Position numbers and translations under genes: made by a program | Sequence record: PV654397.1 | DNA length: 64,000 nucleotides | Reading direction: 5' to 3' (one strand) | The notes under the pieces: model-generated | The model's database searches: none | Told to the model about the DNA's origin: nothing | What the model saw: only the letters and a program-made list of their open reading frames with translations | Shown here: piece by piece, positions 46,478-64,000 of the stretch | Position numbering within the stretch: the stretch's first letter is position 1 | How the letters are laid out: each line of letters starts with the position of its first letter

Positions 46478-46478
46478 A

Positions 46479-51203: not shown

Positions 51204-51614
51204 CTAATCGTGCCATTTAATAGGATACTCCGTTCCATTTATTGTATAAGATATAATCCATCCGTAATGAATAGGATGATTTTTGTCTGAATCAGGAATA
51301 AAATATAAAGATGTACTGGGGTTATAACTGAATAAATCGTTGTTACCAATTGTAAAATGTGATAACTCAATCTTCCTTGTACCTGTACTTGGACGAAGAA
51401 CATTCTTAACACCGAAGACTGTACCTTGATATTTCTCGGAAAATTCAAACAATGCATCTGCAATTAAATCACGAAACTCCGCATGTATGGTTTCAAAAAA
51501 ATCTATATTACACGATGTTTTAATATCCTTGAACTCCTTATATAAAGAGCTTCTTGTATTCAAAAGAAATATTACTTTTTTAAGATCCTGAACTATTTCT
51601 GGATTCATATTCAT
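51204..51614 (-). CDS. hypothetical protein, family C-like
   Basis: FSEKYQGTVF. Confidence 0.65.
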   Translation of the reverse strand: MNMNPEIVQDLKKVIFLLNTRSSLYKEFKDIKTSCNIDFFETIHAEFRDLIADALFEFSEKYQGTVFGVKNVLRPSTGTRKIELSHFTIGNNDLFSYNPSTSLYFIPDSDKNHPIHYGWIISYTINGTEYPIKWHD

Positions 51615-51843
51615 TTATCTCATTCTGTAACTTATGCATCAAAATTTGTATATTAATTTTTCGTCCAAGGTGATTGAGAAATTTCTGTACCATTTCTTCT
51701 TGTACTGATGTACCAAGATAAAATAACATATTAAATTCCGATAACCTCAGAGCAAAATCGTCATCTCCCCCTTGTAAACAAAAATCCCTGTACTTTGATG
51801 CATACAAATAACGGTTTATTTTTTTGTACATTTGGGTCTGCAT
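51580..51843 (-). CDS. family B paralog
   Basis: YLGTSVQEEMV. Confidence 0.8.
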   Translation of the reverse strand: MQTQMYKKINRYLYASKYRDFCLQGGDDDFALRLSEFNMLFYLGTSVQEEMVQKFLNHLGRKINIQILMHKLQNEINEYESRNSSGS

Positions 51844-52028
51844 TGTATCTCCTTTTTCATGCACCTTATTAGATTATCAACGTATTGATCCTGTACTATT
51901 GTCCCTAGATAAAATGATACTTCGAACTCTGATAATTTTATATTGAAAGGATCTACATATACATCTTTAATAAACTCTTTGTACTTCAACATATATGCAT
52001 TAGGTATATTCTTATATATCGATTTCAA
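51816..52028 (-). CDS. family B paralog
   Basis: YLGTIVQDQYV. Confidence 0.8.
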   Translation of the reverse strand: MKSIYKNIPNAYMLKYKEFIKDVYVDPFNIKLSEFEVSFYLGTIVQDQYVDNLIRCMKKEIQCRPKCTKK

Positions 52029-52323
52029 TGATCCTCCCTGACATACCTTGTATTAGCTTATCATACATATCGAGCATCACTTTTTGAATACTAATTAATA
52101 CTGGCATCGTGCAAATATCAATGTCGTATATTAAGCTGTACTGGAATAATTCCTCTTCCTGCATGTGTACTAAATTAGGTAAAAGATAATTGTCTGCCTC
52201 TTCATCCTGGTACTTGAAATGCATAACACCATCCTTTTTGTACAAAAGAATGTCAATATCACCTAACTCTTCTGCATAACCAAAAATACATATACTCGAT
52301 GTTTTTGCTATATTAAATTTCAT
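52012..52323 (-). CDS. family A paralog (short form)
   Basis: QEEELFQYSLIYD. Confidence 0.8.
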   Translation of the reverse strand: MKFNIAKTSSICIFGYAEELGDIDILLYKKDGVMHFKYQDEEADNYLLPNLVHMQEEELFQYSLIYDIDICTMPVLISIQKVMLDMYDKLIQGMSGRIIEIDI

Positions 52324-52332
52324 ATTCTTCTC

Positions 52333-52656
52333 TTATATGTAGAATTCACATACGCGTTGAACAAAATTCTTTGGAAGATGACAATGTGCAATCATCTGCT
52401 TTTGTACTTCCTTCATGTCTTCGAATGTAAATCCTAAAGAATCATCATGTACTAACAAGTACTGAAACTCTTCTTCTTCAGAGATAGAACATAAATTCGG
52501 TACTGAAATTGTTTTTGCTTTTCTTGCACCCAATTTCCAATGAAAAGAATTATTGCATTTTCTGTACTCAAATATCTTCAACCCAGAACCTGTATTAAAA
52601 TCAGCTACTACAATGTAACATGAATTCTTACGTACAATACAATTGAACTTACGCAT
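52333..52656 (-). CDS. family A paralog (short form)
   Basis: SEEEEFQYLLVHD. Confidence 0.8.
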   Translation of the reverse strand: MRKFNCIVRKNSCYIVVADFNTGSGLKIFEYRKCNNSFHWKLGARKAKTISVPNLCSISEEEEFQYLLVHDDSLGFTFEDMKEVQKQMIAHCHLPKNFVQRVCEFYI

Positions 52657-52901
52657 TATCTCCACCTCTCTCCGTCTGTACAAGAGTACTGGTACGTTGT
52701 CGTTAGGGTAGGGACCATGTTTGTAATGGGCATGTTGTTAACAATAACCGTAACAGGCATAAGAATCGTCTCTACTCTACTCTGTCCTGTCCTTGTACAA
52801 TTCATCTTCTGCATTTCATCTGAATCCATGAAATACAATACAAATGGTGCAATCCCAAGAACAATACACAAGACGATAAGGAAATTTAAAAAATTCAACA
52901 T
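52656..52901 (-). CDS. small membrane-anchored protein
   Basis: N-terminal TM segment, Cys pair. Confidence 0.7.
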   Translation of the reverse strand: MLNFLNFLIVLCIVLGIAPFVLYFMDSDEMQKMNCTRTGQSRVETILMPVTVIVNNMPITNMVPTLTTTYQYSCTDGERWR

Positions 52902-52930
52902 AATTTTTACCCCATGATTAACGTACAGGT

Positions 52931-52959
52931 ACTATATCAGTAATGAAAAGTACTGTCAA
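52931..52959 (-). promoter_or_regulatory. sigma70 promoter
   Basis: TTGACA-N17-TATAGT with TGA extension; AGTACT shares the last A of -35. Confidence 0.8.
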
Positions 52960-52960
52960 G

Positions 52961-53335
52961 CTAGTATTGCACTGTTCTAATGAAAGTACCTTTACTCATG
53001 GATTTAAGCTTATGAACCTCTTCCTGCATACCCTTAATTAACCCTAAAGGTATAGGTAAATCATGTACTAAGCTGTACTGAAAGTATTCTTCTTCAGATA
53101 AAGTACTAACATCTGGAATGCCAATTTTAGTTAGATAATCTTGATGTGTTGACCAATAAATTATATCTTCAGTACTATTGTACTCCCCATATACTGAACA
53201 ATATTGATGAATATCTTTCCTGTACCCTTGAGCAATAAAGAACTTATCTACTGCATTACCAGCATTAATAGAATTCACTTCGATTGTCACAGTACTTGAG
53301 CTTGTTTTTCCTTTACTATGCATATTAATCCCCAA
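52961..53335 (-). CDS. family A paralog (short form)
   Basis: LSEEEYFQYSLVHD. Confidence 0.8.
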   Translation of the reverse strand: MGINMHSKGKTSSSTVTIEVNSINAGNAVDKFFIAQGYRKDIHQYCSVYGEYNSTEDIIYWSTHQDYLTKIGIPDVSTLSEEEYFQYSLVHDLPIPLGLIKGMQEEVHKLKSMSKGTFIRTVQY

Positions 53336-53511
53336 ATTAGATATCGAACACTATCAGCTTGATAGTTAGTTCCTACTGTGTGTTTTAATATTAACTCATC
53401 TTTCAGTACTGAACATTCTGCATTAGATATAGGAAGAGAATTAATTCTTTGAATTTCTGGTCGCAAAATACCGCGAAGCTTGCGGTAATCTTCGTATGAT
53501 AATATTTTCAT
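53287..53511 (-). CDS. family B paralog
   Basis: TVGTNYQADSV. Confidence 0.8.
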   Translation of the reverse strand: MKILSYEDYRKLRGILRPEIQRINSLPISNAECSVLKDELILKHTVGTNYQADSVRYLIWGLICIVKEKQAQVL

Positions 53512-53514
53512 TGT

Positions 53515-53859
53515 TTAGTACTCAACGATGTGTTCTTCATAATCACCATTAGGCTCCTGTTTAGATTCTTTCATTAGTACTACCATTTTATGTACTAATG
53601 GCATAGGAAACTCCAAATCCCATACTAATGATTCTTGAAAGTATTCCTCTTCAGATAAAGTACTTAAATCTTTAATATCAACGTGCTTGTATATTTTATT
53701 TTCGTAATTAACAAATGATATATATAAATCACTAACATAAGAATCATAGGTAATTGTGAATGGTTTACCCTTGTAATCCATTACATCTCTACATAGACTA
53801 CTTTTGATATATGTATGTTCAAATGATTTATATACCTTGAGTTGTATATTAGTTTTCAT
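53515..53859 (-). CDS. family A paralog (short form)
   Basis: LSEEEYFQESLVWD. Confidence 0.8.
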   Translation of the reverse strand: MKTNIQLKVYKSFEHTYIKSSLCRDVMDYKGKPFTITYDSYVSDLYISFVNYENKIYKHVDIKDLSTLSEEEYFQESLVWDLEFPMPLVHKMVVLMKESKQEPNGDYEEHIVEY

Positions 53860-54100
53860 ATTTCTCTTTATTAGCTTGTTTAGATTGTGTGGTTTTATAG
53901 TGAATTAAATCTATTAATGTAATCAAGTACAACGTCAAATAGTACTCTTGTTGATCTGTACCTAATGATACAAAGAACTTGTGCTCATAGATTAAAACCT
54001 GTTTCTCTTCAAATGGACATTTAATCCTCTGTATAGGCTTAAGTAAATGATAGTACTTATTAAATCTATGATACATTTCTAGTTCTGTCAGTACTTTCAT
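53849..54100 (-). CDS. family B paralog
   Basis: LGTDQQE. Confidence 0.8.
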   Translation of the reverse strand: MKVLTELEMYHRFNKYYHLLKPIQRIKCPFEEKQVLIYEHKFFVSLGTDQQEYYLTLYLITLIDLIHYKTTQSKQANKEKYEN

Positions 54101-54101
54101 A

Positions 54102-54323
54102 TTAAACACGTACTCCATTAGCTGTAGCATCACGTAAAGCTGTCAAATACTTCTGTACTGCTTGCTCTTGCTTATTTGTACCTAAAAGTATATACATCCA
54201 TAATTCACTGTAATGTACATCTTCTGTATAAGGGTTGTTGTAACTTTTTGATAATATAGCATCAAATTCAGATGCATGAACCCTTGCGAACTTAAGCATA
54301 TCTTGTTGTGTTATGATTCTCAT
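54102..54323 (-). CDS. family B paralog
   Basis: LGTNKQE. Confidence 0.8.
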   Translation of the reverse strand: MRIITQQDMLKFARVHASEFDAILSKSYNNPYTEDVHYSELWMYILLGTNKQEQAVQKYLTALRDATANGVRV

Positions 54324-54535
54324 ATCTTTTCCTGTACTATCTGCATAAGAATCTCTATGTGTGAATTAACAGTTCTCTCTTGATGCTGTGTTCCTAAGAG
54401 TGTCAGTACTATCATATCTGAACGCAAAAGATTTTTCTGAAGTTCACTTATATCAGTTCTTGAATCAAGTGCCATATATTTGTGATTATTCTTCCTGAAT
54501 AGTGCCAAGTACTCTTGATTTGATATTTCCTTCAT
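54320..54535 (-). CDS. family B paralog
   Basis: LGTQHQE. Confidence 0.8.
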   Translation of the reverse strand: MKEISNQEYLALFRKNNHKYMALDSRTDISELQKNLLRSDMIVLTLLGTQHQERTVNSHIEILMQIVQEKI

Positions 54536-54762
54536 AGTTTATCCCTGATGCCATTTAAAAGTGCTCTAATATGCTCCTGTACGAATTTGTACTGACTGTC
54601 TGTTCCTAGAGTGAGTAGTAATCTTAAATCTGAACTTTTGATATGATATTCTAAATCATTATTTGATTCTTGCATCAGTTTCTTAAAGGATGAGAAGTTT
54701 GCAGCCATTAGTTCAATGTATTCTGCTGTTCCTAGGGGTTTGTGTATTGGCTGTTTGTGCAT
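54532..54762 (-). CDS. family B paralog
   Basis: LGTDSQY. Confidence 0.8.
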   Translation of the reverse strand: MHKQPIHKPLGTAEYIELMAANFSSFKKLMQESNNDLEYHIKSSDLRLLLTLGTDSQYKFVQEHIRALLNGIRDKL

Positions 54763-54974
54763 TTTAATTTTATTACCCTTTTGAGTGTATTAATGTAATT
54801 ATACACATTGGCTTCTTGATAGTTAGTTCCCAGTGTAGCTTGAACATAGATTTCATTTAACTTAATAATTTTATCAGTATCTGGTAGTTTTGATGTGTTA
54901 ATGGCAAATAACTTCAAAAACAGTCCATTTAAGATTGTTAGGTATTCTTCGTCGGTAATGATTCGCATTTGCAT
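54732..54974 (-). CDS. family B paralog
   Basis: LGTNYQE. Confidence 0.8.
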   Translation of the reverse strand: MQMRIITDEEYLTILNGLFLKLFAINTSKLPDTDKIIKLNEIYVQATLGTNYQEANVYNYINTLKRVIKLKCTNSQYTNP

Positions 54975-55180
54975 TGGATAAACCTTTTTAGTTCTTTGAT
55001 GTAATCATTAATATTGTATTCTTGATAGTTAGTCCCTAGTGTAGCTTGAACATAGATTTCACTCATTAGAATATTTTTTTCTTCATCAAGTAAATCTGTG
55101 GTCTTTGCTATATACAATTTTAGAATTAAACTACTTAATAGTTCGTGGTATTCACTTGGTGAAAGGATTTTCATTTGCAT
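54938..55180 (-). CDS. family B paralog
   Basis: LGTNYQE. Confidence 0.8.
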   Translation of the reverse strand: MQMKILSPSEYHELLSSLILKLYIAKTTDLLDEEKNILMSEIYVQATLGTNYQEYNINDYIKELKRFIQCKCESLPTKNT

Positions 55181-55386
55181 GTTCTCAGTACAGATTCTTT
55201 AAGTTCATCGATGTAGTCCTCAACGAATTGCTCTTGGAAGTTAGTTCCAACATATAAAAGAACTCTTAAATCTGCTCTAAGTAACTCTTTTTCATCCTCA
55301 TCTATATCAGACAATGTTATGTTTAAGAATTTACTTGTATTAAAGATTAACAATTCTGTTTGTTCACTGTGGTTTAAAATTTTCAT
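55171..55386 (-). CDS. family B paralog
   Basis: VGTNFQE. Confidence 0.8.
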   Translation of the reverse strand: MKILNHSEQTELLIFNTSKFLNITLSDIDEDEKELLRADLRVLLYVGTNFQEQFVEDYIDELKESVLRTCK

Positions 55387-55594
55387 AATCTCTTTTTGCT
55401 TTCCTCGCCAAAAGGTACATATACGATTCTTCGTATTGTGCTTGGAAGTTTGTGTTTAAGAGTCGAAACAACTTCTGTTCTTCTAGAACGAGTTGCTTAT
55501 CTTCATAACAACGGTAGCGTATCAACTTTTTGTATTCGATGTTGATTACATCCATTACTATAAGCCCATGTTCATCATCTGTCAAGTGCTTCAT
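55364..55594 (-). CDS. family B paralog
   Basis: LNTNFQA. Confidence 0.8.
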   Translation of the reverse strand: MKHLTDDEHGLIVMDVINIEYKKLIRYRCYEDKQLVLEEQKLFRLLNTNFQAQYEESYMYLLARKAKRDYENFKPQ

Positions 55595-55833
55595 GCTTTT
55601 TTTCTTTTCCTGATGTGTTTAGTTAAAAGGTATATTAGTTTTCTGATGTATTCTTCTTGATAGTTTGTTCCTAGGAGTGCAAGAAGTTTTGCTTCAACTA
55701 AAGCTAATTGACGTTCTTCAAATGTGTGTTCCAGTATGTACTTTGGGTTTGATTTTTTAGAAATTGCACTATTAGTTTTCATTACAATCTTATGATATTC
55801 ATTAACTGTTAGGATTTTTAAATTCTTGAGCAT
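55591..55833 (-). CDS. family B paralog
   Basis: LGTNYQE. Confidence 0.8.
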   Translation of the reverse strand: MLKNLKILTVNEYHKIVMKTNSAISKKSNPKYILEHTFEERQLALVEAKLLALLGTNYQEEYIRKLIYLLTKHIRKRKKA

Positions 55834-56059
55834 GTATCTTTTCCTTTATAGAGAATTTAAGATATCGAAGCATACTTTCAATGTAATACTCTTGTCTGTC
55901 AGTTCCAAGAAAGTACAGGAGTTGAATGTATAAAACTTCTGCACTCCTTTCGGCATGTGACTTGTTTGTGTCGTTTGGAAGTTGATTTGTAAGTTTTCTG
56001 GATTTAATTAATCGTTCTTTTAACTCATCGTCTGTTAAGTATATCATTTTATTTTGCAT
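55802..56059 (-). CDS. family B paralog
   Basis: LGTDRQE. Confidence 0.8.
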   Translation of the reverse strand: MQNKMIYLTDDELKERLIKSRKLTNQLPNDTNKSHAERSAEVLYIQLLYFLGTDRQEYYIESMLRYLKFSIKEKIHAQEFKNPNS

Positions 56060-56279
56060 TTACTTTTTCCTTAATACTCATTACAAGATGTTCAATCATA
56101 TTTTGAACCATAAATTCTTGTTTATCAGTTCCAAGAACGTATGGTAGCTTCTGAAACAATACATTCGCAGACATTTCATATATTGATTGATTTGGAACGA
56201 ACTTAAGAGTAATGTTATTGGCTTTTAACATCTTCTCTTGAAATTCTTCATTCGTTAAGTATATCATTTCACTTTGCAT
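56049..56279 (-). CDS. family B paralog
   Basis: LGTDKQE. Confidence 0.8.
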   Translation of the reverse strand: MQSEMIYLTNEEFQEKMLKANNITLKFVPNQSIYEMSANVLFQKLPYVLGTDKQEFMVQNMIEHLVMSIKEKVNAK

Positions 56280-56505
56280 TTACTTTTTCCATAATAGTAA
56301 TTTTGAGATATTTAATTATACGTTCAACGTGATACTCCTGCCTATCAGTTCCAAGAAGGTATGGTAATGACTGGAATAAAACTTCTGCACTCCTTTCTGC
56401 TGGGGTTTGGTTTGGGTTGTGTGGAAGATATTTTGTAAGTTTTTTGGATTTATCTAGTCTTTCTGTTAACTCATCATGTGTTAAGTATATCATTTCATTT
56501 TGCAT
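56269..56505 (-). CDS. family B paralog
   Basis: LGTDRQE. Confidence 0.8.
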   Translation of the reverse strand: MQNEMIYLTHDELTERLDKSKKLTKYLPHNPNQTPAERSAEVLFQSLPYLLGTDRQEYHVERIIKYLKITIMEKVNAK

Positions 56506-56732
56506 TTAATGTTTCTTACATAAATTGTCTGGATTAAACAATCAATCCAAGTTTGAATATATTGGTTTTGATACTGTGTGCCTAAGAGACTCTGCATTTT
56601 AAACTCTGCTTCAAGTTCATATCTCTTTTCTATAGAAAAGCTCAAATGACCATATTCTTTATCGTATCTTCTCAGTGCTTCCCCAATTCTATCAAATCTT
56701 TCTGCTAATCTGATGTTATTCACAATATTCAT
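56490..56732 (-). CDS. family B paralog
   Basis: LGTQYQN. Confidence 0.8.
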   Translation of the reverse strand: MNIVNNIRLAERFDRIGEALRRYDKEYGHLSFSIEKRYELEAEFKMQSLLGTQYQNQYIQTWIDCLIQTIYVRNIKCKMK

Positions 56733-57007
56733 CGATCAGTACACCTCAGTGGTTGGGTCATTTGATGAAAGTACAGCTTACCTTTGATTTCCAATAGTAA
56801 CTCAGCAATTAATCGATTTACTTCTGGCTCTTGATAGTTTGTTCCCAATAATACACCCATCTTTAACTCACGCATCATAATCATTTTCTTACTGTGTTGA
56901 ATTTTTTGGTTGTGATAGATTGTATTACGTTTGTGCGTAATTTTTGTCATACGCTCGGTATATTCATCTTTACTTAAATTGATCATTTGCATGTTCATCA
57001 ACCTCAC
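56729..57007 (-). CDS. family B paralog
   Basis: LGTNYQE. Confidence 0.8.
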   Translation of the reverse strand: MRLMNMQMINLSKDEYTERMTKITHKRNTIYHNQKIQHSKKMIMMRELKMGVLLGTNYQEPEVNRLIAELLLEIKGKLYFHQMTQPLRCTDR

Positions 57008-57218
57008 ATTTATTTTCGATACAAATCATGAGTTCTCTAAGATAGTTTTTTATCTTACCTTCCTGATGGTTCGTCCCCAGGAAGTTGCATAACTCTGCTT
57101 CTATTATTTTGATTCTTCTGGTGTCAGGTTTCAATCTTTTGTTATTGAAGATTTGAATCCTTATATCCCTTGATGCATTTAAACGTTTTTGATATTCATG
57201 GAAAGATAAATTAATCAT
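56970..57218 (-). CDS. family B paralog
   Basis: LGTNHQE. Confidence 0.8.
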   Translation of the reverse strand: MINLSFHEYQKRLNASRDIRIQIFNNKRLKPDTRRIKIIEAELCNFLGTNHQEGKIKNYLRELMICIENKCEVDEHANDQFK

Positions 57219-57433
57219 TTACTTTGTATCTCTCTCTTGAGGGCATCAATTAACAACAGTACAGCATTCTCTTGATAGTTTGTTCCTAAGACTGAAAGCA
57301 TCTTAATCTCATTTACTACAATCAACTTCTTTGAGCGTTCAATAATGTTACTATTATAAACGGCGTTACGTGCTGGATAAGTTTTTGCAAGACGTTCATA
57401 ATATTCATCTTTACTTAAATTAATCATTTGCAT
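57215..57433 (-). CDS. family B paralog
   Basis: LGTNYQE. Confidence 0.8.
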   Translation of the reverse strand: MQMINLSKDEYYERLAKTYPARNAVYNSNIIERSKKLIVVNEIKMLSVLGTNYQENAVLLLIDALKREIQSK

Positions 57434-57642
57434 TTACTTTTGACCTCCTTGACTAATGCATCAACCCACATGTCTATATACATTTGTTGATAGTTTGTCC
57501 CTATGAGTGCCCCTGCATAGAGTTCAGCTATCATTGCATGTTTTAGGTTGGCAGGGATGCTCTTATCAGATTGAATCTTTACTCTTCTGTTGGCACATGT
57601 TTTCAGGAGTCTGATGTATTCAAAGCCTTGTAATTTTCTCAT
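57424..57642 (-). CDS. family B paralog
   Basis: IGTNYQQ. Confidence 0.8.
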   Translation of the reverse strand: MRKLQGFEYIRLLKTCANRRVKIQSDKSIPANLKHAMIAELYAGALIGTNYQQMYIDMWVDALVKEVKSKCK

Positions 57643-57854
57643 TCTTTTGATATCACCTTGTTACGTAAGGCACTTAACAATACGTCAGTGTAGATGTTTT
57701 GATAGTTTGTTCCTACGAAAGCACCCAACTTCATTTCAGCTATTATAACACATTTATCCTCTTGTGCAATAGACTTGTCTAAAGAAATACTAACAACTTT
57801 CCTTCTTATAGCTTGTAACCTCCAATGATACTGATACTCATTTAGGGTTATCAT
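57639..57854 (-). CDS. family B paralog
   Basis: VGTNYQN. Confidence 0.8.
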   Translation of the reverse strand: MITLNEYQYHWRLQAIRRKVVSISLDKSIAQEDKCVIIAEMKLGAFVGTNYQNIYTDVLLSALRNKVISKE

Positions 57855-58089
57855 TCTCTCGCCTCCATATCTCGGTTCTAATGTGTTGACATTGTGCTTC
57901 GATGAACATATCTATTGATTTGGCAATTGCGTTTTTATCTGTGCCAGTCATCAGTACAAGCATCTCGGCCTCACAGTGAAGTAAACGCATGATATCATAG
58001 GGTAATATTCCAGATACCGTGTCATAGTGTTTCTGTGCCAGTGTCTGTAATAGTTTACAATACATTTTGTGATTTAGTCTGTGTCGCAT
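57838..58089 (-). CDS. family B paralog (variant)
   Basis: MTGTDKNA. Confidence 0.7.
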   Translation of the reverse strand: MRHRLNHKMYCKLLQTLAQKHYDTVSGILPYDIMRLLHCEAEMLVLMTGTDKNAIAKSIDMFIEAQCQHIRTEIWRRENDNPK

Positions 58090-58325
58090 TTTTTATTCCA
58101 TTCTTTTTTGGCCTTGATGGTTTTATATTGGATTTGGTTTCTTAATGCTGATAAGTATCGTTGAATGAACAGATCTTGATAGTTTGTTCCAATGAATTTC
58201 ATAAGATAAAGTTCACCGTTGATAACATCCACTTCAGGTGCACCATATAAGGCATTGTTTTTTCTAAGGGCATGGATTAAAGAGAATAGGGCAGTTTGAT
58301 ACTCAACTCCTGATAAAGTCTTCAT
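58074..58325 (-). CDS. family B paralog
   Basis: IGTNYQD. Confidence 0.8.
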   Translation of the reverse strand: MKTLSGVEYQTALFSLIHALRKNNALYGAPEVDVINGELYLMKFIGTNYQDLFIQRYLSALRNQIQYKTIKAKKEWNKKCDTD

Positions 58326-58560
58326 GTTTTGTGAGCCAATAATCATCTAGTTTATCCTGTATAACATTCATTAATTGTTCGACATATTCTGTGCAAAACT
58401 TATCTTGATATTGAGTCCCCATAAAGTACAGCAACCATAGCTCATTAACTTTAGCTCGCATTTGGTTCCATGTAAGGCTGGGGTCATCGTAGACTATCCT
58501 TGCTATAGGGGTTAGTTTACGGACTATAGTTTCATATTCATCTAGTGTTAAGTGTTTCAT
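58303..58560 (-). CDS. family B paralog
   Basis: MGTQYQD. Confidence 0.8.
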   Translation of the reverse strand: MKHLTLDEYETIVRKLTPIARIVYDDPSLTWNQMRAKVNELWLLYFMGTQYQDKFCTEYVEQLMNVIQDKLDDYWLTKHEDFIRS

Positions 58561-58781
58561 TTACCTAAATCCCTGACATGACATTTTAAGGCCGTGATGT
58601 GGTTGTCAACCATAACCTCCTGATAGTTTGTTCCTACAAATGGTATTAATGTTGAGTCTGTTAGTATAACATACTTTTCATTGGATGTTAGTGATTCATC
58701 ATCGTAAACTTGAAGTCTAAAGTTCTTCCCTTGTTCTAATCGTTTAAGATATTCTTGGGTGTTTATGTCTTTCATTTGCAT
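58557..58781 (-). CDS. family B paralog
   Basis: VGTNYQE. Confidence 0.8.
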   Translation of the reverse strand: MQMKDINTQEYLKRLEQGKNFRLQVYDDESLTSNEKYVILTDSTLIPFVGTNYQEVMVDNHITALKCHVRDLGK

Positions 58782-58990
58782 TTGTCCCTTATTAGATCAG
58801 TGAGGGCAACTATGTGTGCAACAACATACTCTTCCTGAAAGTTCGTCCCCAGTACAGCCATCATGCGTATATCGGTGGTGTTTATCCTGTGTTCCCTTAC
58901 ACATAAACCTTCTGTGTGAGGAAGTGTAAAATATTTGTTTATTGCAGCAATGATAATTTTATTCTTCTCGTAATTACTTAAATGTTTCAT
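58772..58990 (-). CDS. family B paralog
   Basis: LGTNFQE. Confidence 0.8.
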   Translation of the reverse strand: MKHLSNYEKNKIIIAAINKYFTLPHTEGLCVREHRINTTDIRMMAVLGTNFQEEYVVAHIVALTDLIRDKCK

Positions 58991-59199
58991 AGTTTGCTCT
59001 TAATGTATTTCTGGAGTGCAATTATATACTCATTCAAGAAGTGCTCCTGATAATCTGTGCCGAGGAATGCACCCAATAGTATATCATTTTCCAATACTAA
59101 TGCTAAGTTCAAATCATCAGTCTCTTCATATACTATGAGAATTTCAAGTTGTCTTGCAGCGACGCGTTCGGTATATAGATTTGAGTTAATGCTATTCAT
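58987..59199 (-). CDS. family B paralog
   Basis: LGTDYQE. Confidence 0.8.
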   Translation of the reverse strand: MNSINSNLYTERVAARQLEILIVYEETDDLNLALVLENDILLGAFLGTDYQEHFLNEYIIALQKYIKSKL

Positions 59200-59408
59200 A
59201 GTTTACTCTTAATGTAATTCTGGAGTGCAATTAAGTATTCCCCTACATAATACACCTGAAAGTCTGTATCCAAAAATGCACCCATAAGTAAATCTTTTTC
59301 TAATACCCTTGATAAGTTAAGGTCTGCATTTGAATTGTATATAATTAAGATTTTATTCTGGACAGAAACAAAACGTATCTTATATTCTTCTGGTGTTAAA
59401 AAAATCAT
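59196..59408 (-). CDS. family B paralog
   Basis: LDTDFQV. Confidence 0.8.
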   Translation of the reverse strand: MIFLTPEEYKIRFVSVQNKILIIYNSNADLNLSRVLEKDLLMGAFLDTDFQVYYVGEYLIALQNYIKSKL

Positions 59409-59614
59409 AGTTTACTCTTAATATCTTCTATTAAAAAATGAATCCAATCGTCAACATACTCTTCCTGATGGTTTGTGTTCAGTACAGCCAACATGCGGAT
59501 CTCTGCTCTTGCAACTTGGATTTCAGTTTTAGAAAGGTCTTTGCTGATATCAAACATTAAGTCCATGTATTTCAAGATAAGACCGAATGATTGGGTTCGT
59601 GTTATAGTTTTCAT
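59405..59614 (-). CDS. family B paralog
   Basis: LNTNHQE. Confidence 0.8.
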   Translation of the reverse strand: MKTITRTQSFGLILKYMDLMFDISKDLSKTEIQVARAEIRMLAVLNTNHQEEYVDDWIHFLIEDIKSKL

Positions 59615-59811
59615 TGTTTCCTCGTGGACAATATTTCATTTTTCAATGCATCCATATATTGAATCACCCATCTTCCCTGATAGCTTGTACCCAATGTAAT
59701 CAAAAGGTATAACTCAATTCGTTCTAAGTTTGTGTCTGTGTTATAAATCTTTACCATGTTTTTACGTAACAGTTCTTGATAATCTTCTTTATTTAAAATA
59801 CGCATTTTCAT
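59611..59811 (-). CDS. family B paralog
   Basis: LGTSYQG. Confidence 0.8.
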   Translation of the reverse strand: MKMRILNKEDYQELLRKNMVKIYNTDTNLERIELYLLITLGTSYQGRWVIQYMDALKNEILSTRKQ

Positions 59812-60005
59812 AGTCTACCTTTTATGTCCCTTCGTAATTCTTGTAAGTATAGTTCGATATACTTTTCTTGATAGTTAGTTCCTATGAAAAGTTTCATAAC
59901 CAATTCACGCTTATATGCAATACCACGGATATGTGACATATGTAGGATATATGCCATGTTGGATATGAGTGTGTGGTTGTGCTCTTCTTGAGTTAAAATA
60001 CGCAT
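59808..60005 (-). CDS. family B paralog (first gene of the array)
   Basis: IGTNYQE; GGAG SD. Confidence 0.8.
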   Translation of the reverse strand: MRILTQEEHNHTLISNMAYILHMSHIRGIAYKRELVMKLFIGTNYQEKYIELYLQELRRDIKGRL

Positions 60006-60035
60006 AGGGACTCCATTAAAAATAATATCAATCCA

Positions 60036-60063
60036 ATAATATACGATTCATATAAAAAGTCAA
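60036..60063 (-). promoter_or_regulatory. sigma70 promoter of family B array
   Basis: TTGACT-N16-TATTAT. Confidence 0.7.
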
Positions 60064-60254
60064 TAACATTTTATAAGTAATACCCCTTTATCGAAGTCGC
60101 TAAGGTTACCCGCCCTTTAGCCCCCTACGCATTTTGCCATAGTCCAATCCCTTTTTATTCATAAAAGTCAAGGGATTACCTATGCATTTTTTTAACGCTG
60201 AAGTTTAAAAATGCCTTGACTTTTTTATGATTCAGTACTAAATCCCTTTACGCA

Positions 60255-60464
60255 TTAATCCTTCGTTACGCTTACGATTATCTGTGTATCCCCATAGTCC
60301 TGCCATACTTCCACGCCAGCCGTCGCCCTGGTTAGTCGTGCTGTCATCTGCTTAATGGTCTTAGGCTTTAGTGGAACCTGTTGCAGTACTGTACGCATAG
60401 TATCATCGACGTTATCGTGTACGCCTGCAATAGTGCCTAGGACGCTGTATACTGTATAGAACAT
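60255..60464 (-). CDS. early hypothetical protein
   Basis: 69 aa, GGAGG SD. Confidence 0.75.
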   Translation of the reverse strand: MFYTVYSVLGTIAGVHDNVDDTMRTVLQQVPLKPKTIKQMTARLTRATAGVEVWQDYGDTQIIVSVTKD

Positions 60465-60532
60465 ATGTATGCCCTCCTGATATAGTTAAGGCCGCTACAA
60501 GGCGGCCTATGATGTTTGGTGATGTGTAACGC

Positions 60533-60934
60533 TTACAGTCCTAAGATAGTGCGTGCTTCGTTACGTTCCGTGCACAGCTGCATGATGTGAGCAAGTAAGT
60601 CCTTGCTAATGTATCCGGTGTTCATAGCTTCACGAATAGATACATCATAAGCACCGAACCCCGTGCGAACGATACGCACATCATTCAGGTTAGTATTATA
60701 GATACCGCCGAGATCAACGGCTTCGAATACTACATCAACAGAATATTCATTGTTGCCATCGTGGAAGTTTTCCAGTGCAATAGTATTGGATACCGCCCAA
60801 CGTTTGCAGTTTCCAATGATGCGGCACTGTTCCGGTTGGATAGTGCCATTACTTACAGCGTACTCCAGTGCATCTTTACCAAAAGTCCGAGCCAGTACTA
60901 AAACGTCAGCGAAGGAAGTGATTGAGAAGGTCAT
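60533..60934 (-). CDS. early hypothetical protein
   Basis: ATG 60934 after AAGGAG. Confidence 0.8.
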   Translation of the reverse strand: MTFSITSFADVLVLARTFGKDALEYAVSNGTIQPEQCRIIGNCKRWAVSNTIALENFHDGNNEYSVDVVFEAVDLGGIYNTNLNDVRIVRTGFGAYDVSIREAMNTGYISKDLLAHIMQLCTERNEARTILGL

Positions 60935-60988
60935 GATAAAACTCCTTAATTTAGGAGGGAGAACCATTTCCCCCTCTCTATGTAAAAC

Positions 60989-61016
60989 ATTATACATGAA
61001 TCTAAGTACTATGCAA
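60989..61016 (-). promoter_or_regulatory. early promoter followed by leader hairpin
   Basis: TTGCAT-N16-TATAAT; AGTACT in spacer and upstream of -35. Confidence 0.8.
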
Positions 61017-61019
61017 GTA

Positions 61020-61355
61020 CTATTTCATTTTAATACCTGGATTCAGGTAACGGTGAGAGCCGTATTCTGGAGAGGTTTCGGTCCAGTACAGTAAATCGAT
61101 AGTCCCTTTAGCGTTAATCTTATCTACCAGCTTATTCATCTTAGCGTATACTACATCAGCATCGATGCGTTTAAAGCCAGTAGCTTTAGTGAAGTAGTAA
61201 TGATTTACTTCGCTATCGTTAAGGATATACCGAGAACCGTCAGCCGTTTGTGCGACAATGAATGAGAATGATACTTTACGATCAAGGCCGTCGCAGTATA
61301 CAGATGAATCATTGGTACGGATGAAAGCTTTAACGATATCGATTGAAGTACTCAT
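61020..61355 (-). CDS. early hypothetical protein
   Basis: 111 aa, AGGAG SD. Confidence 0.8.
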   Translation of the reverse strand: MSTSIDIVKAFIRTNDSSVYCDGLDRKVSFSFIVAQTADGSRYILNDSEVNHYYFTKATGFKRIDADVVYAKMNKLVDKINAKGTIDLLYWTETSPEYGSHRYLNPGIKMK

Positions 61356-61408
61356 GGTGAATCTCCTAACTTTGTGGGCCGTCGCACCGTTGCCGCCCTA
61401 CGAGATAC

Positions 61409-61437
61409 ATTATTGCAGTACTGATATACTTTGTCAA
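61409..61437 (-). promoter_or_regulatory. early promoter
   Basis: TTGACA-N17-AATAAT; AGTACT in spacer. Confidence 0.65.
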
Positions 61438-61546
61438 TACTTTTTTATTAATAGTTTTAGTTCCACCAGCAGATAGTTACTCACCGTTATTAACTATATA
61501 TTTTGGATACACCTATGCACCCTGTGGGCTAGTTTTTGTCTATGCG

Positions 61547-61588
61547 TATATAATAGCAAAGGGACTGACCGGAGTCAATCCCTTTTTT
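61547..61588 (-). repeat. terminator-promoter cassette, copy 1 (42-bp exact repeat)
   Basis: hairpin with UCCG loop carrying TTGACT-N17-TATTAT; identical at 63807-63848. Confidence 0.85.
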
Positions 61589-61601
61589 TATTCTTTTTTT
61601 G

Positions 61602-61802
61602 TTAGATGATTCTCCAATCATCAACGATCATGGTAAGATACCGAACCAGTGATTCGAGTGATTCGTGTTCTCGATAGTCTGCCGCTCCACCAGCGGTACA
61701 AGTACAGCCGATTAAGCCGTTTTGTAGTTCCTGGATCTTTACGTCGATCTGGTTGGCTTTAGCTTCTTTCAGTACTTCAACCAGGGCGATAGCGATAGAC
61801 AT
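61602..61802 (-). CDS. early hypothetical protein
   Basis: 66 aa, CxC, GGAG SD. Confidence 0.75.
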   Translation of the reverse strand: MSIAIALVEVLKEAKANQIDVKIQELQNGLIGCTCTAGGAADYREHESLESLVRYLTMIVDDWRII

Positions 61803-61857
61803 AATGTTTTACTCCAAACTATTGGCGGGAGAACTATTCCCCCGCTCTATGTAAAAC

Positions 61858-61885
61858 ATTATACATTACTGGTTAGTACTGTCAA
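61858..61885 (-). promoter_or_regulatory. early promoter followed by leader hairpin
   Basis: TTGACA-N16-TATAAT; AGTACT overlaps -35. Confidence 0.85.
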
Positions 61886-61892
61886 ATAGTTT

Positions 61893-62150
61893 TTATGAAA
61901 TATCTTCGATGTAGTCGGCCCATTTCATTTTTTCAGTACTGTCAATGGCTACCGGATTATTTGGATCAAACCATTCACCATCACCGCAATACATACCCAC
62001 GGCTACGGTTTTATAGCCATCCTGGGCCGTACACCACGACATTGCACGATAGATATGGCCTTTAACTGGTTGCAGTACTGGTAACGTTTTATGGTCTTCT
62101 ACGTAGGCCATAGCTTGAGGATTTACCCGATATTGTGTGAACTGATCCAT
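61893..62150 (-). CDS. early hypothetical protein
   Basis: 85 aa. Confidence 0.75.
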   Translation of the reverse strand: MDQFTQYRVNPQAMAYVEDHKTLPVLQPVKGHIYRAMSWCTAQDGYKTVAVGMYCGDGEWFDPNNPVAIDSTEKMKWADYIEDIS

Positions 62151-62178
62151 TATGTTTCCCCTTGTAGTTAGTAAAGTT

Positions 62179-62207
62179 ATTACATCAGTACTATCAAGCT
62201 ATGTCAA
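62179..62207 (-). promoter_or_regulatory. early promoter
   Basis: TTGACA-N17-TGTAAT; AGTACT in spacer and upstream. Confidence 0.7.
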
Positions 62208-62226
62208 TAGTACTGAAATAAAACTT

Positions 62227-62451
62227 TTAGATTAGATTATTGAGGCCGTCAATGGTAGACTCACTTTCTTCTTTCTCCCATTGTCGGTAGTACTTCCATG
62301 CTTCATGATAGGTGGCGATTAGTTCATCTTTTTGATCCTGGTTACATGCCAGTACTGAATCACGGTGAGCGGTGTTATAGATAGAATCGAATGATTTCTT
62401 CTCTTCTGCCAGGTTAGCTACTTCCCGCATCAGTTCATCAAAGTTAGCCAT
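62227..62451 (-). CDS. early hypothetical protein
   Basis: 74 aa, AGGAG SD. Confidence 0.75.
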   Translation of the reverse strand: MANFDELMREVANLAEEKKSFDSIYNTAHRDSVLACNQDQKDELIATYHEAWKYYRQWEKEESESTIDGLNNLI

Positions 62452-62498
62452 TTTATTACTCCTTTTAGTGGGGGAGGATATCTCCCCCTATGCAAAAC

Positions 62499-62526
62499 AT
62501 TATACTTTGTTTTAGTTATTATGCAA
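62499..62526 (-). promoter_or_regulatory. early promoter followed by leader hairpin
   Basis: AGTAC-TTGCAT-N16-TATAAT. Confidence 0.8.
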
Positions 62527-62782
62527 GTACTTTTTTCATATAAACATTAAATTCTACACCGCCGTAACCTTCCACGATGATATGTTTTGCGTTATCACGT
62601 TTGCACATAGTGAAACCGTTGTTGATATGTTCTGCATTTTCCAGGGCGACATCACCGATAGCGGCACATACGGCACTAATAACAGTATTCCGCAAAGTAC
62701 TGGTATCATTGGCGGTCATAGTAGTTTGCAGTACTACGTTGTCGTATACGTGTGCATTGATAGTGATTTCGATAGTGTTCAT
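62519..62782 (-). CDS. early hypothetical protein
   Basis: ATG 62782 after AGGAG. Confidence 0.75.
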   Translation of the reverse strand: MNTIEITINAHVYDNVVLQTTMTANDTSTLRNTVISAVCAAIGDVALENAEHINNGFTMCKRDNAKHIIVEGYGGVEFNVYMKKVLA

Positions 62783-62834
62783 GGTGTATCTCCTGGACTT
62801 GAGGGGAAACCATTTCCCCCTCTCGATATAAAAC

Positions 62835-62862
62835 ATTATACGTTAATCTAACTACAATGCAA
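62835..62862 (-). promoter_or_regulatory. early promoter followed by leader hairpin
   Basis: AGTAC-TTGCAT-N16-TATAAT. Confidence 0.8.
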
Positions 62863-62869
62863 GTACTTT

Positions 62870-63061
62870 TTAAATTTTATTTCCGATATAGTCCGGTCTA
62901 TTCTTTTCGGTCATACGCTTTGCTAATGTCTGCATATGGCTTATAGCGTTCAAGGTGTCTTCCTCCAGGGATGAATCAAGATAATCAGGATCATTCTTCA
63001 CCTTGCAATGATTATGATATCGTAGTACTGCCAGTACTTTTTTAACTTCTTCTACTGTCAT
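62870..63061 (-). CDS. early hypothetical protein
   Basis: 63 aa. Confidence 0.7.
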   Translation of the reverse strand: MTVEEVKKVLAVLRYHNHCKVKNDPDYLDSSLEEDTLNAISHMQTLAKRMTEKNRPDYIGNKI

Positions 63062-63330
63062 AATAAGTACCCCACTTCGTTAGCTTTCAGGTTAGTATCA
63101 ATCATCAGTGGATTTTTGTAGTTCACAAAACGATTAGTTTTTTCGATAGCAAATCCCATATAATCCAGCTTACTAACAGTACATTCATTCTTAAAAACTT
63201 CTTTCGCTGCATCGATTGCTGATTGCATGGATAACCGACCATCTAAATTAATGTTTCCAAATGATCCACCAGCAGAAGTAGGATTACCGTTCATATCTTT
63301 AATGATCATAGTAGCGGAGTAGCTAGACAT
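63058..63330 (-). CDS. early hypothetical protein
   Basis: 90 aa, AGGA SD. Confidence 0.75.
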   Translation of the reverse strand: MSSYSATMIIKDMNGNPTSAGGSFGNINLDGRLSMQSAIDAAKEVFKNECTVSKLDYMGFAIEKTNRFVNYKNPLMIDTNLKANEVGYLL

Positions 63331-63383
63331 AATTTTGTTTCCTTTTAGTATCGGGGAGAACTATTCTCCCCTTGATGTAAACT

Positions 63384-63411
63384 ATTATACAGTACTGGTA
63401 TACTTTGTCAA
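63384..63411 (-). promoter_or_regulatory. early promoter followed by leader hairpin
   Basis: TTGACA-N16-TATAAT; AGTACT in spacer. Confidence 0.85.
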
Positions 63412-63414
63412 TAC

Positions 63415-63636
63415 TTAATTACGGTTAAAATGATATGTGCCTTTATCATCCTGTACGCCCCATACTGATTTACCATCAACACCAGTGAAGCCGGATTGTA
63501 ATTCAATATGGAAACCATTATTATCAACTACAAAAACTTTTTTATTTTCATCCCGATAACATTGATATTCTGAATCAACATTAAAGGCCGCATCATTCAG
63601 TAGATTGGAAGCGTAAATGCAAGTCATTGTAGTCAT
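63415..63636 (-). CDS. early hypothetical protein
   Basis: 73 aa, AAGGA SD. Confidence 0.75.
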   Translation of the reverse strand: MTTMTCIYASNLLNDAAFNVDSEYQCYRDENKKVFVVDNNGFHIELQSGFTGVDGKSVWGVQDDKGTYHFNRN

Positions 63637-63687
63637 GATTTTATTCCTTATTGCCAGGGAGAACCGTTCCCCCTCTCGATATAAAAC

Positions 63688-63715
63688 ATTATACTTGATT
63701 CTAAGTACAATGCAA
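63688..63715 (-). promoter_or_regulatory. early promoter followed by leader hairpin
   Basis: AGTAC-TTGCAT-N16-TATAAT. Confidence 0.8.
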
Positions 63716-63806
63716 GTACTTTTTAAAAAATAGTTTTCAGTACTGAATACTTATATAATAGATACACTTCCGCACCCTATGGGTCAGTGAGTTATCTCTC
63801 AATGGA

Positions 63807-63848
63807 TATATAATAGCAAAGGGACTGACCGGAGTCAATCCCTTTTTT
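63807..63848 (-). repeat. terminator-promoter cassette, copy 2
   Basis: identical to 61547-61588. Confidence 0.85.
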
Positions 63849-63856
63849 AATCTTTT

Positions 63857-64000
63857 TTATCGTGTTACCTTACTTGCTGCCACATCACGCTTTTTATAGT
63901 ACTGATTCCAGATATTGCTGGTTAAACCGTAATCAAGTACTTTAATAAGTCCATTACGATCCTGGCCGATATTCTGTTTTCTGATATCTCTTATCGTTAG
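63857..64000 (-). CDS. C-terminal fragment of a Ser/Thr protein kinase-like gene (runs off window)
   Basis: RDIRKQNIG catalytic loop and KVLDYG (DFG equivalent); not in ORF track. Confidence 0.7.
   Translation of the reverse strand, partial: LTIRDIRKQNIGQDRNGLIKVLDYGLTSNIWNQYYKKRDVAASKVTR

What the first reader, a model, noticed from the sequence alone, without database searches (positions are those of the whole stretch)
60989..63720. AGTACT sites are built into the early promoters
Seen: in this region every clear promoter outside the two cassettes has AGTACT overlapping or abutting the -35 or lying in the spacer (61005, 61016, 61417, 61875, 62187, 62209, 62526, 62862, 63391, 63715). The same holds at 52931-52959, with GTAC at 47687-47715. 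Established: Dam/GATC sites in promoters control Mu mom and pap. Inference: modification or protein binding at AGTACT times or discriminates early transcription.
Basis: partly seen in the sequence, partly recalled or inferred. Interest (0 to 1): 0.65.

Follow-up and report, generated by a model that had tools for sequence, protein, structure and literature searches.

The report
AGTACT palindrome in jumbo-phage early promoters
The AGTACT sites in these promoters are real and sit at fixed positions, but they are the densest part of a genome-wide, evolutionarily conserved AGTACT (TCAGTACTGA) word of this 381-kb E. coli jumbo phage, and whatever reads that word is unknown.

Summary
The window is Escherichia phage WPEC5, an Asteriusvirus of the RaK2/PBECO4 group. 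The finding lies at the start of its 21.7-kb direct terminal repeat (DTR).

**Observation.** All ten listed AGTACT sites exist. Each sits in a sigma70-like promoter on the minus strand.

**Position in promoters.** Across the DTR, 36 of 43 such promoters carry AGTACT. The offsets are fixed: AGTAC|TTG at the upstream edge of the -35, and AGTACT(G)|TATAAT just before the -10. Promoter windows hold 21.4 sites/kb against 4.7/kb in the rest of the DTR. The same layout recurs in Klebsiella RaK2, Cronobacter GAP32 and a Yersinia phage.

AGTACT is about 8-fold over-represented across the whole genome (1,122 copies).
- It occurs in all three codon phases.
- Its flanks are symmetric (TCAGTACTGA).
- It is conserved against PBECO4 more than its flanks are (74% vs 48%).
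- In the E. coli chromosome, the extended forms counted there (CAGTACTG, TCAGTACTGA) are at chance level.
- An 8.5-kb island has 49 GTACT on one strand and no AGTAC. PBECO4 keeps this polarity.

**Reading.** AGTACT is a selected double-strand DNA word read by an unidentified symmetric factor. Its placement at early promoters would gate RNA polymerase. Methylation, timing and the direction of the effect are untested. I found no report of this in the papers searched.

The parts
1..64000 (.). Genome-wide AGTACT word: 205 copies in the window. Consensus with flanks is TC-AGTACT-GA.
   Evidence: 205 copies vs 16.9 expected. Codon phases 71/46/65 plus 23 noncoding. C at -1 in 42% and G at +1 in 41% of sites.
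60103..64000 (-). Start of the right copy of the 21,662-bp direct terminal repeat: small minus-strand genes, each with its own promoter.
   Evidence: Record bases 1-21662 are identical to 359665-381326. Window position = record position - 299562.
60989..61021 (-). Promoter: AGTAC|TTGCAT, then AGTACT directly after the -35, then TATAAT (sites 61016 and 61005).
   Evidence: offsets -27 and -16 from the -10.
61409..61437 (-). Promoter: TTGACA, 17-nt spacer ending in AGTACTGC, then AATAAT (site 61417).
   Evidence: offset -8; 11 of 12 consensus matches.
61858..61885 (-). Promoter: TTGAC|AGTACT overlapping the end of the -35, then TATAAT (site 61875).
   Evidence: offset -17; 12 of 12.
62179..62214 (-). 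Promoter: AGTACT-A-TTGACA, spacer ending in AGTACTGA, then TGTAAT (sites 62209 and 62187).
   Evidence: read by eye. My pattern missed it because of its TGTAAT -10.
62499..62531 (-). Promoter: AGTAC|TTGCAT ... TATAAT (site 62526).
   Evidence: offset -27.
62835..62867 (-). Promoter: AGTAC|TTGCAT ... TATAAT (site 62862).
   Evidence: offset -27.
63384..63411 (-). Promoter: TTGACA ... AGTACTG|TATAAT (site 63391).
   Evidence: offset -7; 12 of 12.
63688..63720 (-). Promoter: AGTAC|TTGCAT ... TATAAT (site 63715).
   Evidence: offset -27.
52931..52959 (-). Promoter outside the repeat: TTGAC|AGTACT ... TATAGT.
47687..47715 (-). Promoter inside the polar island. It carries AGTACA, not AGTACT: TTGACA-cg-AGTACA ... 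TACAAT.
43943..52458 (+). Polar island: 49 GTACT on the + strand (42 as TGTACT, flanked C..G) and no AGTAC on that strand. The genes are mostly not paralogous.
   Evidence: The PBECO4 orthologue (78% identity) has 47 vs 0.
19679..20203 (-). PF05869 Dam-type N6-adenine DNA methyltransferase. The only weak candidate reader found: it co-occurs with the enrichment, and its target is unknown.
61539..61598 (.). It contains no AGTACT.
63799..63858 (.).

Best explanation
**Shown.** AGTACT (extended consensus TCAGTACTGA) is a selected cis-acting word of double-stranded phage DNA. It runs through the whole genome at about one copy per 360 bp. It is densest in the terminal repeat, where it is built into the sigma70-type promoters at two fixed places about 20 bp apart:
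- overlapping the first T of the -35 (AGTAC|TTGCAA or TTGACA);
- ending one or two bases before the -10 (AGTACTG|TATAAT).

**Inferred.** A symmetric reader recognises the word. The most likely candidate is an abundant dimeric DNA-binding protein made or carried by the phage. A modifying enzyme is less likely.
- Genome-wide, occupancy would mark or organise phage DNA. The word is about 35 times denser in the phage than in the E. coli chromosome.
- At early promoters, occupancy of two sites bracketing the -35 and abutting the -10 would control access of host RNA polymerase. The most plausible effect is shut-off of the roughly 45 early promoters of each repeat once the factor accumulates.

For: **A DNA-level word, not a coding artefact.**
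- 8.1-fold excess genome-wide. It is the only strongly enriched 6-bp palindrome in a genome that otherwise lacks 22 GC-containing palindromes altogether.
- It occurs in all codon phases.
- Density is flat, 2.5/kb in coding and 2.9/kb in noncoding DNA outside the repeat.

**Symmetric recognition.**
- C at -1 and G at +1. CAGTACTG occurs 215 times against about 3.7 expected; TCAGTACTGA 53 times; GAGTACTC only 7.

**Selection.**
- 74% of sites are conserved against PBECO4, versus 47.6% of phase-matched flanking 6-mers (Fisher p = 4e-10).
- One-letter neighbours of the word are not depleted.

**Conserved across genera.**
- 6-7-fold enrichment in RaK2, GAP32 and Yersinia fHe-Yen9-04.
- TCAGTACTGA counts: RaK2 73, CBB 30, GAP32 23, Yersinia 19, Agrobacterium Atu_ph07 0, E. 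coli K-12 3.

**Promoter placement.**
- Offsets -27 and -7/-8 dominate in WPEC5 and in RaK2, GAP32 and the Yersinia phage.
- 4.6-fold over the local background.

**Host polymerase.** A relative, PA5oct, depends on host RNA polymerase.
Against: - No reader has been identified, and no annotated repressor or HTH protein stands out in the record.
- No transcript 5' ends, binding data or methylation data exist. RNA-library contigs were uninformative.
- A plain repressor would not need about 900 conserved sites inside ORFs, so the genome-wide role is a separate and unknown function.
- The strictly one-stranded island (49 vs 0) is hard to reconcile with a purely symmetric double-strand reader. It hints at a strand-specific process such as transcription, priming or an end-entering nuclease.
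- The 18 published promoters of the relative CBB do not show AGTACT beside the -35.
Confidence: 0.45

Rival explanations
1. Epigenetic switch. A phage methyltransferase modifies AGTACT. Fully modified incoming DNA and newly replicated DNA then differ in early-promoter activity, as Dam/GATC does for Mu mom, pap or IS10.
For: - Sites lie where base modification can affect sigma70 contacts, at the -35 edge and at -19 to -14.
- A PF05869 adenine methyltransferase is present in all four lineages with the enrichment that were searched for it, and absent from Atu_ph07, which lacks the enrichment.
- Some protection would be consistent with this phage tolerating about 1,100 ScaI sites while avoiding many other palindromes.
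Against: - Characterised PF05869 enzymes target GATC (from memory, not tested here).
- The co-occurrence rests on five related genomes.
- Protection by methylation does not explain an 8-fold enrichment or site-by-site conservation in ORFs.
- The C5 methyltransferase is missing from the Yersinia phage, which has the enrichment.
- No methylation data exist. Published digests used other enzymes.
Confidence: 0.15
2. Intrinsic promoter element. The AGTAC before the -35 and the AGTACTG before the -10 are read by RNA polymerase itself, as a junction between the UP element and the -35 and as an extended -10. They make early promoters strong, with no separate reader.
For: - The positions abut the hexamers.
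- An A-tract precedes the upstream copy.
- In promoters with a 17-bp spacer (AGTACTGG|CATAAT), the TG falls at -15/-14, the extended -10 position, and these promoters have weaker -10 hexamers.
Against: - The same hexamer serves at two or three different promoter positions.
- In promoters with a 16-bp spacer the TG is one base off the extended -10 position.
- The word is enriched and conserved inside ORFs, where polymerase recognition is irrelevant.
- Sigma70-like promoters outside the repeat mostly lack it.
Confidence: 0.15
3. The primary function is strand-specific and unrelated to promoters, for example a priming, recombination or nuclease-attenuating (Chi-like) signal read as GTACT/AGTAC on single strands. 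The palindrome simply serves both strands. Promoter copies persist because the repeat is the most exposed DNA.
For: - The polar island has 49 GTACT and 0 AGTAC, kept in PBECO4 at 78% identity.
- The non-palindromic variants are biased toward AGTACA on the coding strand.
- CAGTACTG ends in CTG on both strands.
- Density is highest in and beside the terminal repeats.
Against: - It does not explain the fixed offsets from the -10 in four genera.
- Only the full palindrome shows extra conservation. TGTACT, AGTACA and TGTACA do not.
Confidence: 0.15
4. No function at promoters. The promoter copies are inherited through duplication of one promoter and 5'-UTR module, on top of a high genomic background.
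For: - The promoter modules are repeats of 60-85% identity.
- 22 of 43 DTR promoters fall into one similarity cluster.
Against: - 12 of 16 clusters carry the site.
- The offsets are kept while the spacers differ.
- The same offsets occur in RaK2, GAP32 and the Yersinia phage.
- The excess over the local background is 4.6-fold.
Confidence: 0.07

Closest known systems
Bacillus phage SPO1 TF1 and phage phi29 p6 (abundant phage DNA-binding proteins that coat the phage genome and repress early promoters; SPO1's lie in its terminal redundancy). From memory.
   Same: - A block of strong early promoters for small host-takeover genes lies inside a long terminal repeat.
- The proposed reader would bind all along the phage DNA and at early promoters.
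   Different: - TF1 tells phage DNA apart by hydroxymethyluracil, and p6 by bendability. Here the mark would be a discrete palindromic word.
- No such protein has been found in this phage.
Stoperators of mycobacteriophage L5 and other cluster A phages (repressor sites at the early promoter and dispersed through the genome). From memory.
   Same: One short word occurs both in the early promoter and at many other places in the genome.
   Different: - Stoperators number 20-40, are asymmetric, lie in intergenic gaps in one orientation, and serve lysogeny.
- Here there are about 1,000 palindromic copies, mostly inside ORFs, in a virulent phage.
Dam/GATC-controlled promoters (Mu mom, pap, IS10 pIN).
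   Same: A short palindrome overlaps promoter elements.
   Different: - GATC is not enriched in those genomes to make this work.
- Here the word is AGTACT, no methylation is known, and GATC itself is at 0.53 of expectation.
Over-represented genomic words such as Chi (GCTGGTGG) and the uptake sequences of Haemophilus and Neisseria.
   Same: A word far denser in 'self' DNA than in other DNA, spread through coding sequence. The phage has about 35 times the host's density.
   Different: - Chi is asymmetric and oriented with replication.
- Uptake sequences spread by biased uptake.
- Neither is part of promoter architecture.
SlmA-binding site GTGAGTACTCAC of E. coli (PMC3020112).
   Same: It shares the AGTACT core, and SlmA is a factor of the hosts.
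   Different: - The phage flanks are C..G.
- G at -1 is depleted (7% of sites).
- GT.AGTACT.AC occurs twice and the full site never.
RpoD-like early promoters with UP-like elements described for the RaK2-like phages CBB and GAP32 (PMC5259590).
   Same: Same clade, the same kind of promoter, and the same location in and near the terminal repeat.
   Different: That work does not mention AGTACT, and its 18 listed CBB promoters lack it beside the -35.

Membership tests
Sigma70-type (RpoD-like) phage early promoter | -35 and -10 hexamers close to TTGACA and TATAAT, 16-18 bp apart | tested here: met
   Several are 11-12 of 12 matches. The TTGCAT/TTGCAA class scores 9.5-10.5.
Sigma70-type (RpoD-like) phage early promoter | Located upstream of genes, on the coding strand | tested here: met
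   AGTACT and the promoters peak 40-100 nt upstream of DTR start codons. All are on the minus strand, as the genes are.
Sigma70-type (RpoD-like) phage early promoter | Mapped transcription start, early timing, dependence on host RNA polymerase | not testable with these tools
   RNA-library contigs give no 5' ends. The only indirect support is rifampicin sensitivity of the relative PA5oct.
Methylation-controlled promoter (Dam/GATC type) | The methylatable site overlaps promoter elements | tested here: met
   (offsets -27, -16/-17, -7/-8).
Methylation-controlled promoter (Dam/GATC type) | A methyltransferase that modifies the site | tested here: inconclusive
   PF05869 and PF00145 methyltransferases exist. 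Only PF05869 co-occurs with the enrichment. Its specificity is unknown.
Methylation-controlled promoter (Dam/GATC type) | Promoter activity depends on methylation state | not testable with these tools
   Needs methylome data and reporter or in vitro assays.
Dispersed operator / phage nucleoid-protein sites (stoperator, TF1, p6 type) | The same word at early promoters and dispersed through the genome | tested here: met
Dispersed operator / phage nucleoid-protein sites (stoperator, TF1, p6 type) | An identified cognate DNA-binding protein | not tested
   No candidate appears in the annotation. I ran no systematic screen.
SlmA-binding sites | 12-bp GTGAGTACTCAC, or at least GT.AGTACT.AC | tested here: not met
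   0 and 2 copies respectively. GAGTACTC occurs 7 times against 215 for CAGTACTG.
LexA boxes | CTGT-N8-ACAG / TACTG-N10-CAGTA | tested here: not met
   2 and 3 copies in 360 kb.
Word enriched by biased mismatch repair (VSP-like) | One-letter neighbours of the word are depleted | tested here: not met
   Eight of nine neighbour classes are at or above expectation.

The most novel reading that the evidence does not exclude
TCAGTACTGA is a 'self' word of the enterobacterial RaK2-like jumbo phages. An undiscovered phage factor would read about 1,000 copies per genome. That reading would both set phage DNA apart from host DNA, in a phage without bulk base modification, and switch the roughly 90 terminal-repeat promoters. 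The conserved one-stranded island would show that reading can be strand-specific.
Probability: 0.3. Interest if true: 0.8.

Novelty: new variant of a known kind. Interest (0 to 1): 0.62.

Why it matters
- **Self-marking without base modification.** These are among the largest coliphages, and most of their genes are unexplained. A word about 35 times denser than in the host, conserved site by site and across at least five genera, points to a major unknown DNA-reading system. T4 achieves discrimination between phage and host DNA by base modification. This phage may do it by sequence.
- **A handle on early gene control.** The fixed placement at the promoters gives a direct experimental entry point to early-gene control in RaK2-like phages.
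- **Practical use.** The promoter set (AGTAC|TTGACA ... AGTACTG|TATAAT, followed by a 5' stem-loop) is a ready source of strong, possibly switchable, promoters.
- **Cheap first test.** Digest virion DNA with ScaI.

Tried and rejected
- **Nucleus-forming phage with its own RNA polymerase (my first guess).** Rejected. The window is 100% identical to WPEC5, an Asteriusvirus with T4-like replication and late-sigma genes. A relative is reported to lack chimallin.
- **Codon or dipeptide artefact.** Rejected, because the word occurs in all three phases.
- **SlmA sites and LexA boxes.** Rejected by counts.
- **Biased-repair sink.** Rejected, because the one-letter neighbours are not depleted.
- **By-product of avoiding GGTACC and CGTACG.** Rejected. 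GTAC as a whole is 2.3-fold enriched, and AGTACT (984) far exceeds TGTACA (206).
- **Periodic spacing of sites.** None found beyond the 20-23 bp pairs inside promoters.
- **Paralogy as the cause of AGTACT-free stretches.** True for 54.1-60.0 kb, a tandem array of more than 24 paralogues. Not true for the island at 43.9-52.5 kb.
- **Function of the island genes.** PHROGs and Pfam give only families of unknown function.
- **Rfam.** No match in 60000-64000.
- **Public RNA runs.** Only assembled contigs were available. Their breaks fall in the repeated promoter modules and give no transcript ends.
- **Literature.** Searches for AGTACT with phage, for PBECO4/121Q/RaK2/GAP32 promoters and for Asteriusvirus found no mention of this word.
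- **Masked bases.** The run of 50 N at 44156-44205 was left as it is.
Full report
**Where the window lies.** The window is 100% identical to Escherichia phage WPEC5 (PV654397.1, 381,326 bp), record bases 299563-363562. WPEC5 is an Asteriusvirus of the PBECO4/121Q/RaK2 group. It has T4-like replication, recombination, structural and late-sigma genes, and no phage RNA polymerase is annotated. Record bases 1-21662 equal 359665-381326 exactly, so the genome has a 21.7-kb direct terminal repeat (DTR). Its right copy starts at window 60103. Repeats of about 21 kb have been confirmed experimentally for close relatives. The finding therefore sits in the first 3.6 kb of the DTR. This stretch holds very small minus-strand genes, each with its own upstream promoter-like sequence. 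That these genes are 'early' is an inference. It rests on the promoter type and on the view taken for the relative CBB.

**The observation.** All ten coordinates are AGTACT. On the minus strand they fall into three layouts:
- AGTAC|TTGCAT, where the site shares the first T of the -35 (61016, 62526, 62862, 63715);
- directly after or overlapping the end of the -35 (61005, 61875);
- at the end of the spacer, one or two bases before the -10 (61417, 62187, 63391).

Site 62209 lies one base upstream of a TTGACA. The claims for 52931-52959 and 47687-47715 also hold. The two 'cassettes' are copies of a 12-bp-stem terminator-like hairpin whose stem happens to resemble TTGACT/TATTAT.

**Is it more than the local background?** I defined promoters without reference to AGTACT, as TTG, three more bases, a 16-18 nt spacer, and a TATAAT-like hexamer. 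This gave 43 candidates in the DTR.
- 36 of the 43 carry AGTACT within 45 nt upstream of the -10.
- The offsets are sharply peaked at -27 (18 cases) and -7/-8 (21 cases), with a few at -16/-17 and -29 to -31.
- Promoter windows make up 10% of the DTR but hold 47 of its 138 sites: 21.4/kb against 4.7/kb, binomial p = 3e-14.
- The promoters are partly duplicates. After clustering at 70% identity, 12 of 16 clusters still carry the site.
- The association is specific to the repeat. It holds for 37/44 intergenic sigma70-like hits in the DTR, 7/39 outside it, and 5/90 chance hits inside ORFs.

AGTACT is enriched everywhere.
- There are 205 copies in the window against 16.9 expected, and 1,122 in the genome. 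In the non-redundant 360 kb, 984 copies compare with 121 expected.
- Outside the DTR the density is flat: 2.5/kb in ORFs and 2.9/kb between them, with no gradient along genes. All three codon phases are used.
- The flanks are symmetric. C precedes and G follows in 42-47% of sites, and G before the site is rare. CAGTACTG occurs 215 times against about 3.7 expected, and TCAGTACTGA 53 times.
- The E. coli K-12 chromosome has these words at chance level: 78 and 3 copies in 4.64 Mb.
- The sites are under purifying selection. In an alignment with PBECO4 (85% identity), 74% of AGTACT sites in window 1-44155 are intact, against 47.6% of phase-matched neighbouring 6-mers (p = 4e-10). TGTACT, AGTACA and TGTACA show no such excess.
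- One-letter neighbours of the word are not depleted, which argues against a repair-driven sink.

The enrichment stands out against the rest of the genome's composition. Twenty-two GC-containing 6-bp palindromes have no copy at all, and GCGC is absent where 356 are expected.

**Relatives.**
- 40-kb samples of Yersinia fHe-Yen9-04, Klebsiella RaK2 and Cronobacter GAP32 show the same 6-7-fold enrichment, the same CAGTAC preference and no GCGC. Agrobacterium Atu_ph07 does not (3 copies vs 13.7 expected).
- Whole-record counts of TCAGTACTGA are 73 (RaK2), 30 (CBB), 23 (GAP32), 19 (Yersinia), 0 (Atu_ph07) and 3 (E. coli K-12).
- The promoter layout is also conserved, although the spacers differ. 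In RaK2 (226-244 kb) 21 of 25 promoter-like sites carry AGTACT, in GAP32 14 of 21, and in the Yersinia phage 6 of 10. Almost all of these sit at -27 to -29 and at -7 to -9.
- The 18 published CBB promoters do not show it. The genome-wide property is therefore the wider one.

**A polar island.** Between 43943 and 52458 there is no AGTAC on the + strand, while GTACT occurs 49 times, 42 of them as TGTACT with the usual C..G flanks. The next largest AGTAC-free gap in the window is 850 bp. The genes there are mostly not paralogous and have no known function. The PBECO4 orthologue, at only 78% identity, shows 47 vs 0. The polarity is therefore maintained by selection. The one promoter-like site examined in the island carries AGTACA. 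I cannot explain this. It is the main observation that a purely symmetric double-strand reader does not account for. The second AGTACT-poor stretch, 54.1-60.0 kb, is a tandem array of more than 24 paralogous small genes, and that origin explains it.

**How it most likely works.**

*Shown:* AGTACT is a selected, symmetric DNA word. It is genome-wide, conserved across genera, and placed at fixed positions in terminal-repeat promoters.

*Inferred:* a symmetric reader binds or modifies it. In promoter coordinates the two common positions span about -39 to -34 and -19 to -14. They lie about two helical turns apart. This is where a bound dimer would meet sigma region 4 and the alpha C-terminal domain at one site, and sigma region 3 at the other. 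A factor that accumulates during infection would then switch all early promoters together. The copies inside ORFs must serve a second, genome-wide role, such as marking, compaction or protection.

*Alternatives:*
- The methylation variant is possible but has no direct support. A PF05869 adenine methyltransferase co-occurs with the enrichment in five genomes, and a C5 enzyme does not. Published digests used enzymes that do not probe the site.
- A direct role in polymerase recognition fits the promoters with a 17-bp spacer, where TG falls at the extended -10 position. It does not fit the sites inside ORFs.
- A strand-specific process fits the island but not the fixed promoter offsets.

**Comparison with known systems.** The nearest functional parallels are SPO1 TF1 and phi29 p6 (genome-coating phage proteins that repress early promoters) and the stoperators of mycobacteriophage L5. 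They differ in how the DNA is recognised, and in the number, symmetry and location of sites. SlmA sites share the core but fail on the flanks. Dam/GATC control shares only the idea. RpoD-like promoters with UP-like elements are already described for this clade. The AGTACT word, its genome-wide selection and the island were not mentioned in any paper I could search.

**Verdict.** The feature is real and larger than reported, and its mechanism is open. The masked run of N at 44156-44205 was not filled.

Noticed in passing
window 43943-52458: 8.5-kb polar island: 49 GTACT and 0 AGTAC on the + strand, with TGTACT taking the place of AGTACT. The polarity is conserved in PBECO4 at 78% identity.
   Followed up: partly
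whole window and whole WPEC5 genome: Extreme avoidance of palindromes. GCGC has 0 copies where 356 are expected. Twenty-two 6-bp palindromes have no copy, among them GGATCC, GGTACC, CTGCAG, CCATGG and GTCGAC. All palindromes with only two G/C are near expectation. RaK2, GAP32 and the Yersinia phage also have no GCGC.
   Followed up: partly
window 54102-60005: Tandem array of at least 24 paralogous genes of about 65-90 aa, packed end to end just inside the right terminal repeat. It is almost free of GTAC.
   Followed up: partly
window 60940-63680 and the whole DTR (L002, L004): 30 of 43 predicted early transcripts begin with a GC-rich stem-loop of the GGGGAGAA ... TTCTCCCC type, with varied stems. 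It lies about 6 nt after the likely start and just before the ribosome-binding site. Mean folding energy is -9.9 kcal/mol, against -5.3 for shuffled sequence.
   Followed up: partly
window 61539-61598 and 63799-63858: Repeated hairpin with a 12-bp stem and T-runs on the + strand. It looks like a terminator against rightward (antisense) transcription. Its stem mimics a TTGACT/TATTAT promoter. Further copies lie in the DTR.
   Followed up: no
L004:8560-9700 (record 20.6-21.7 kb, inner end of the DTR; outside the window): About 1 kb without convincing genes. It holds iteron-like TAGCCRT/CCAGA repeats and the highest AGTACT density in the genome (12 per kb). It could be an origin or a packaging-related region.
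   Followed up: no
whole genome: Hexamers that are parts of Chi (CTGGTG, TGGTGG, GCTGGT-like) are 4-5-fold enriched. The full Chi octamer occurs 12 times on the + strand and 25 on the - strand. Whether this reflects coding repeats or selection was not examined.
   Followed up: no
window 60900-63900 (search result): Six Campylobacter phage records matched this E. coli phage repeat region in the megablast search. This is odd for the host and may reflect chimeric or contaminated records.
   Followed up: no
window 44156-44205: Run of 50 N (masked). It was left unfilled and lies at the left edge of the polar island.
   Followed up: no
L004:14672-32893 (record 26.7-44.9 kb; outside the window): About 15 tandem plus-strand paralogues annotated as RCC1/ATS1-like 'chromosome condensation regulator', just inside the left terminal repeat.
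   Followed up: no
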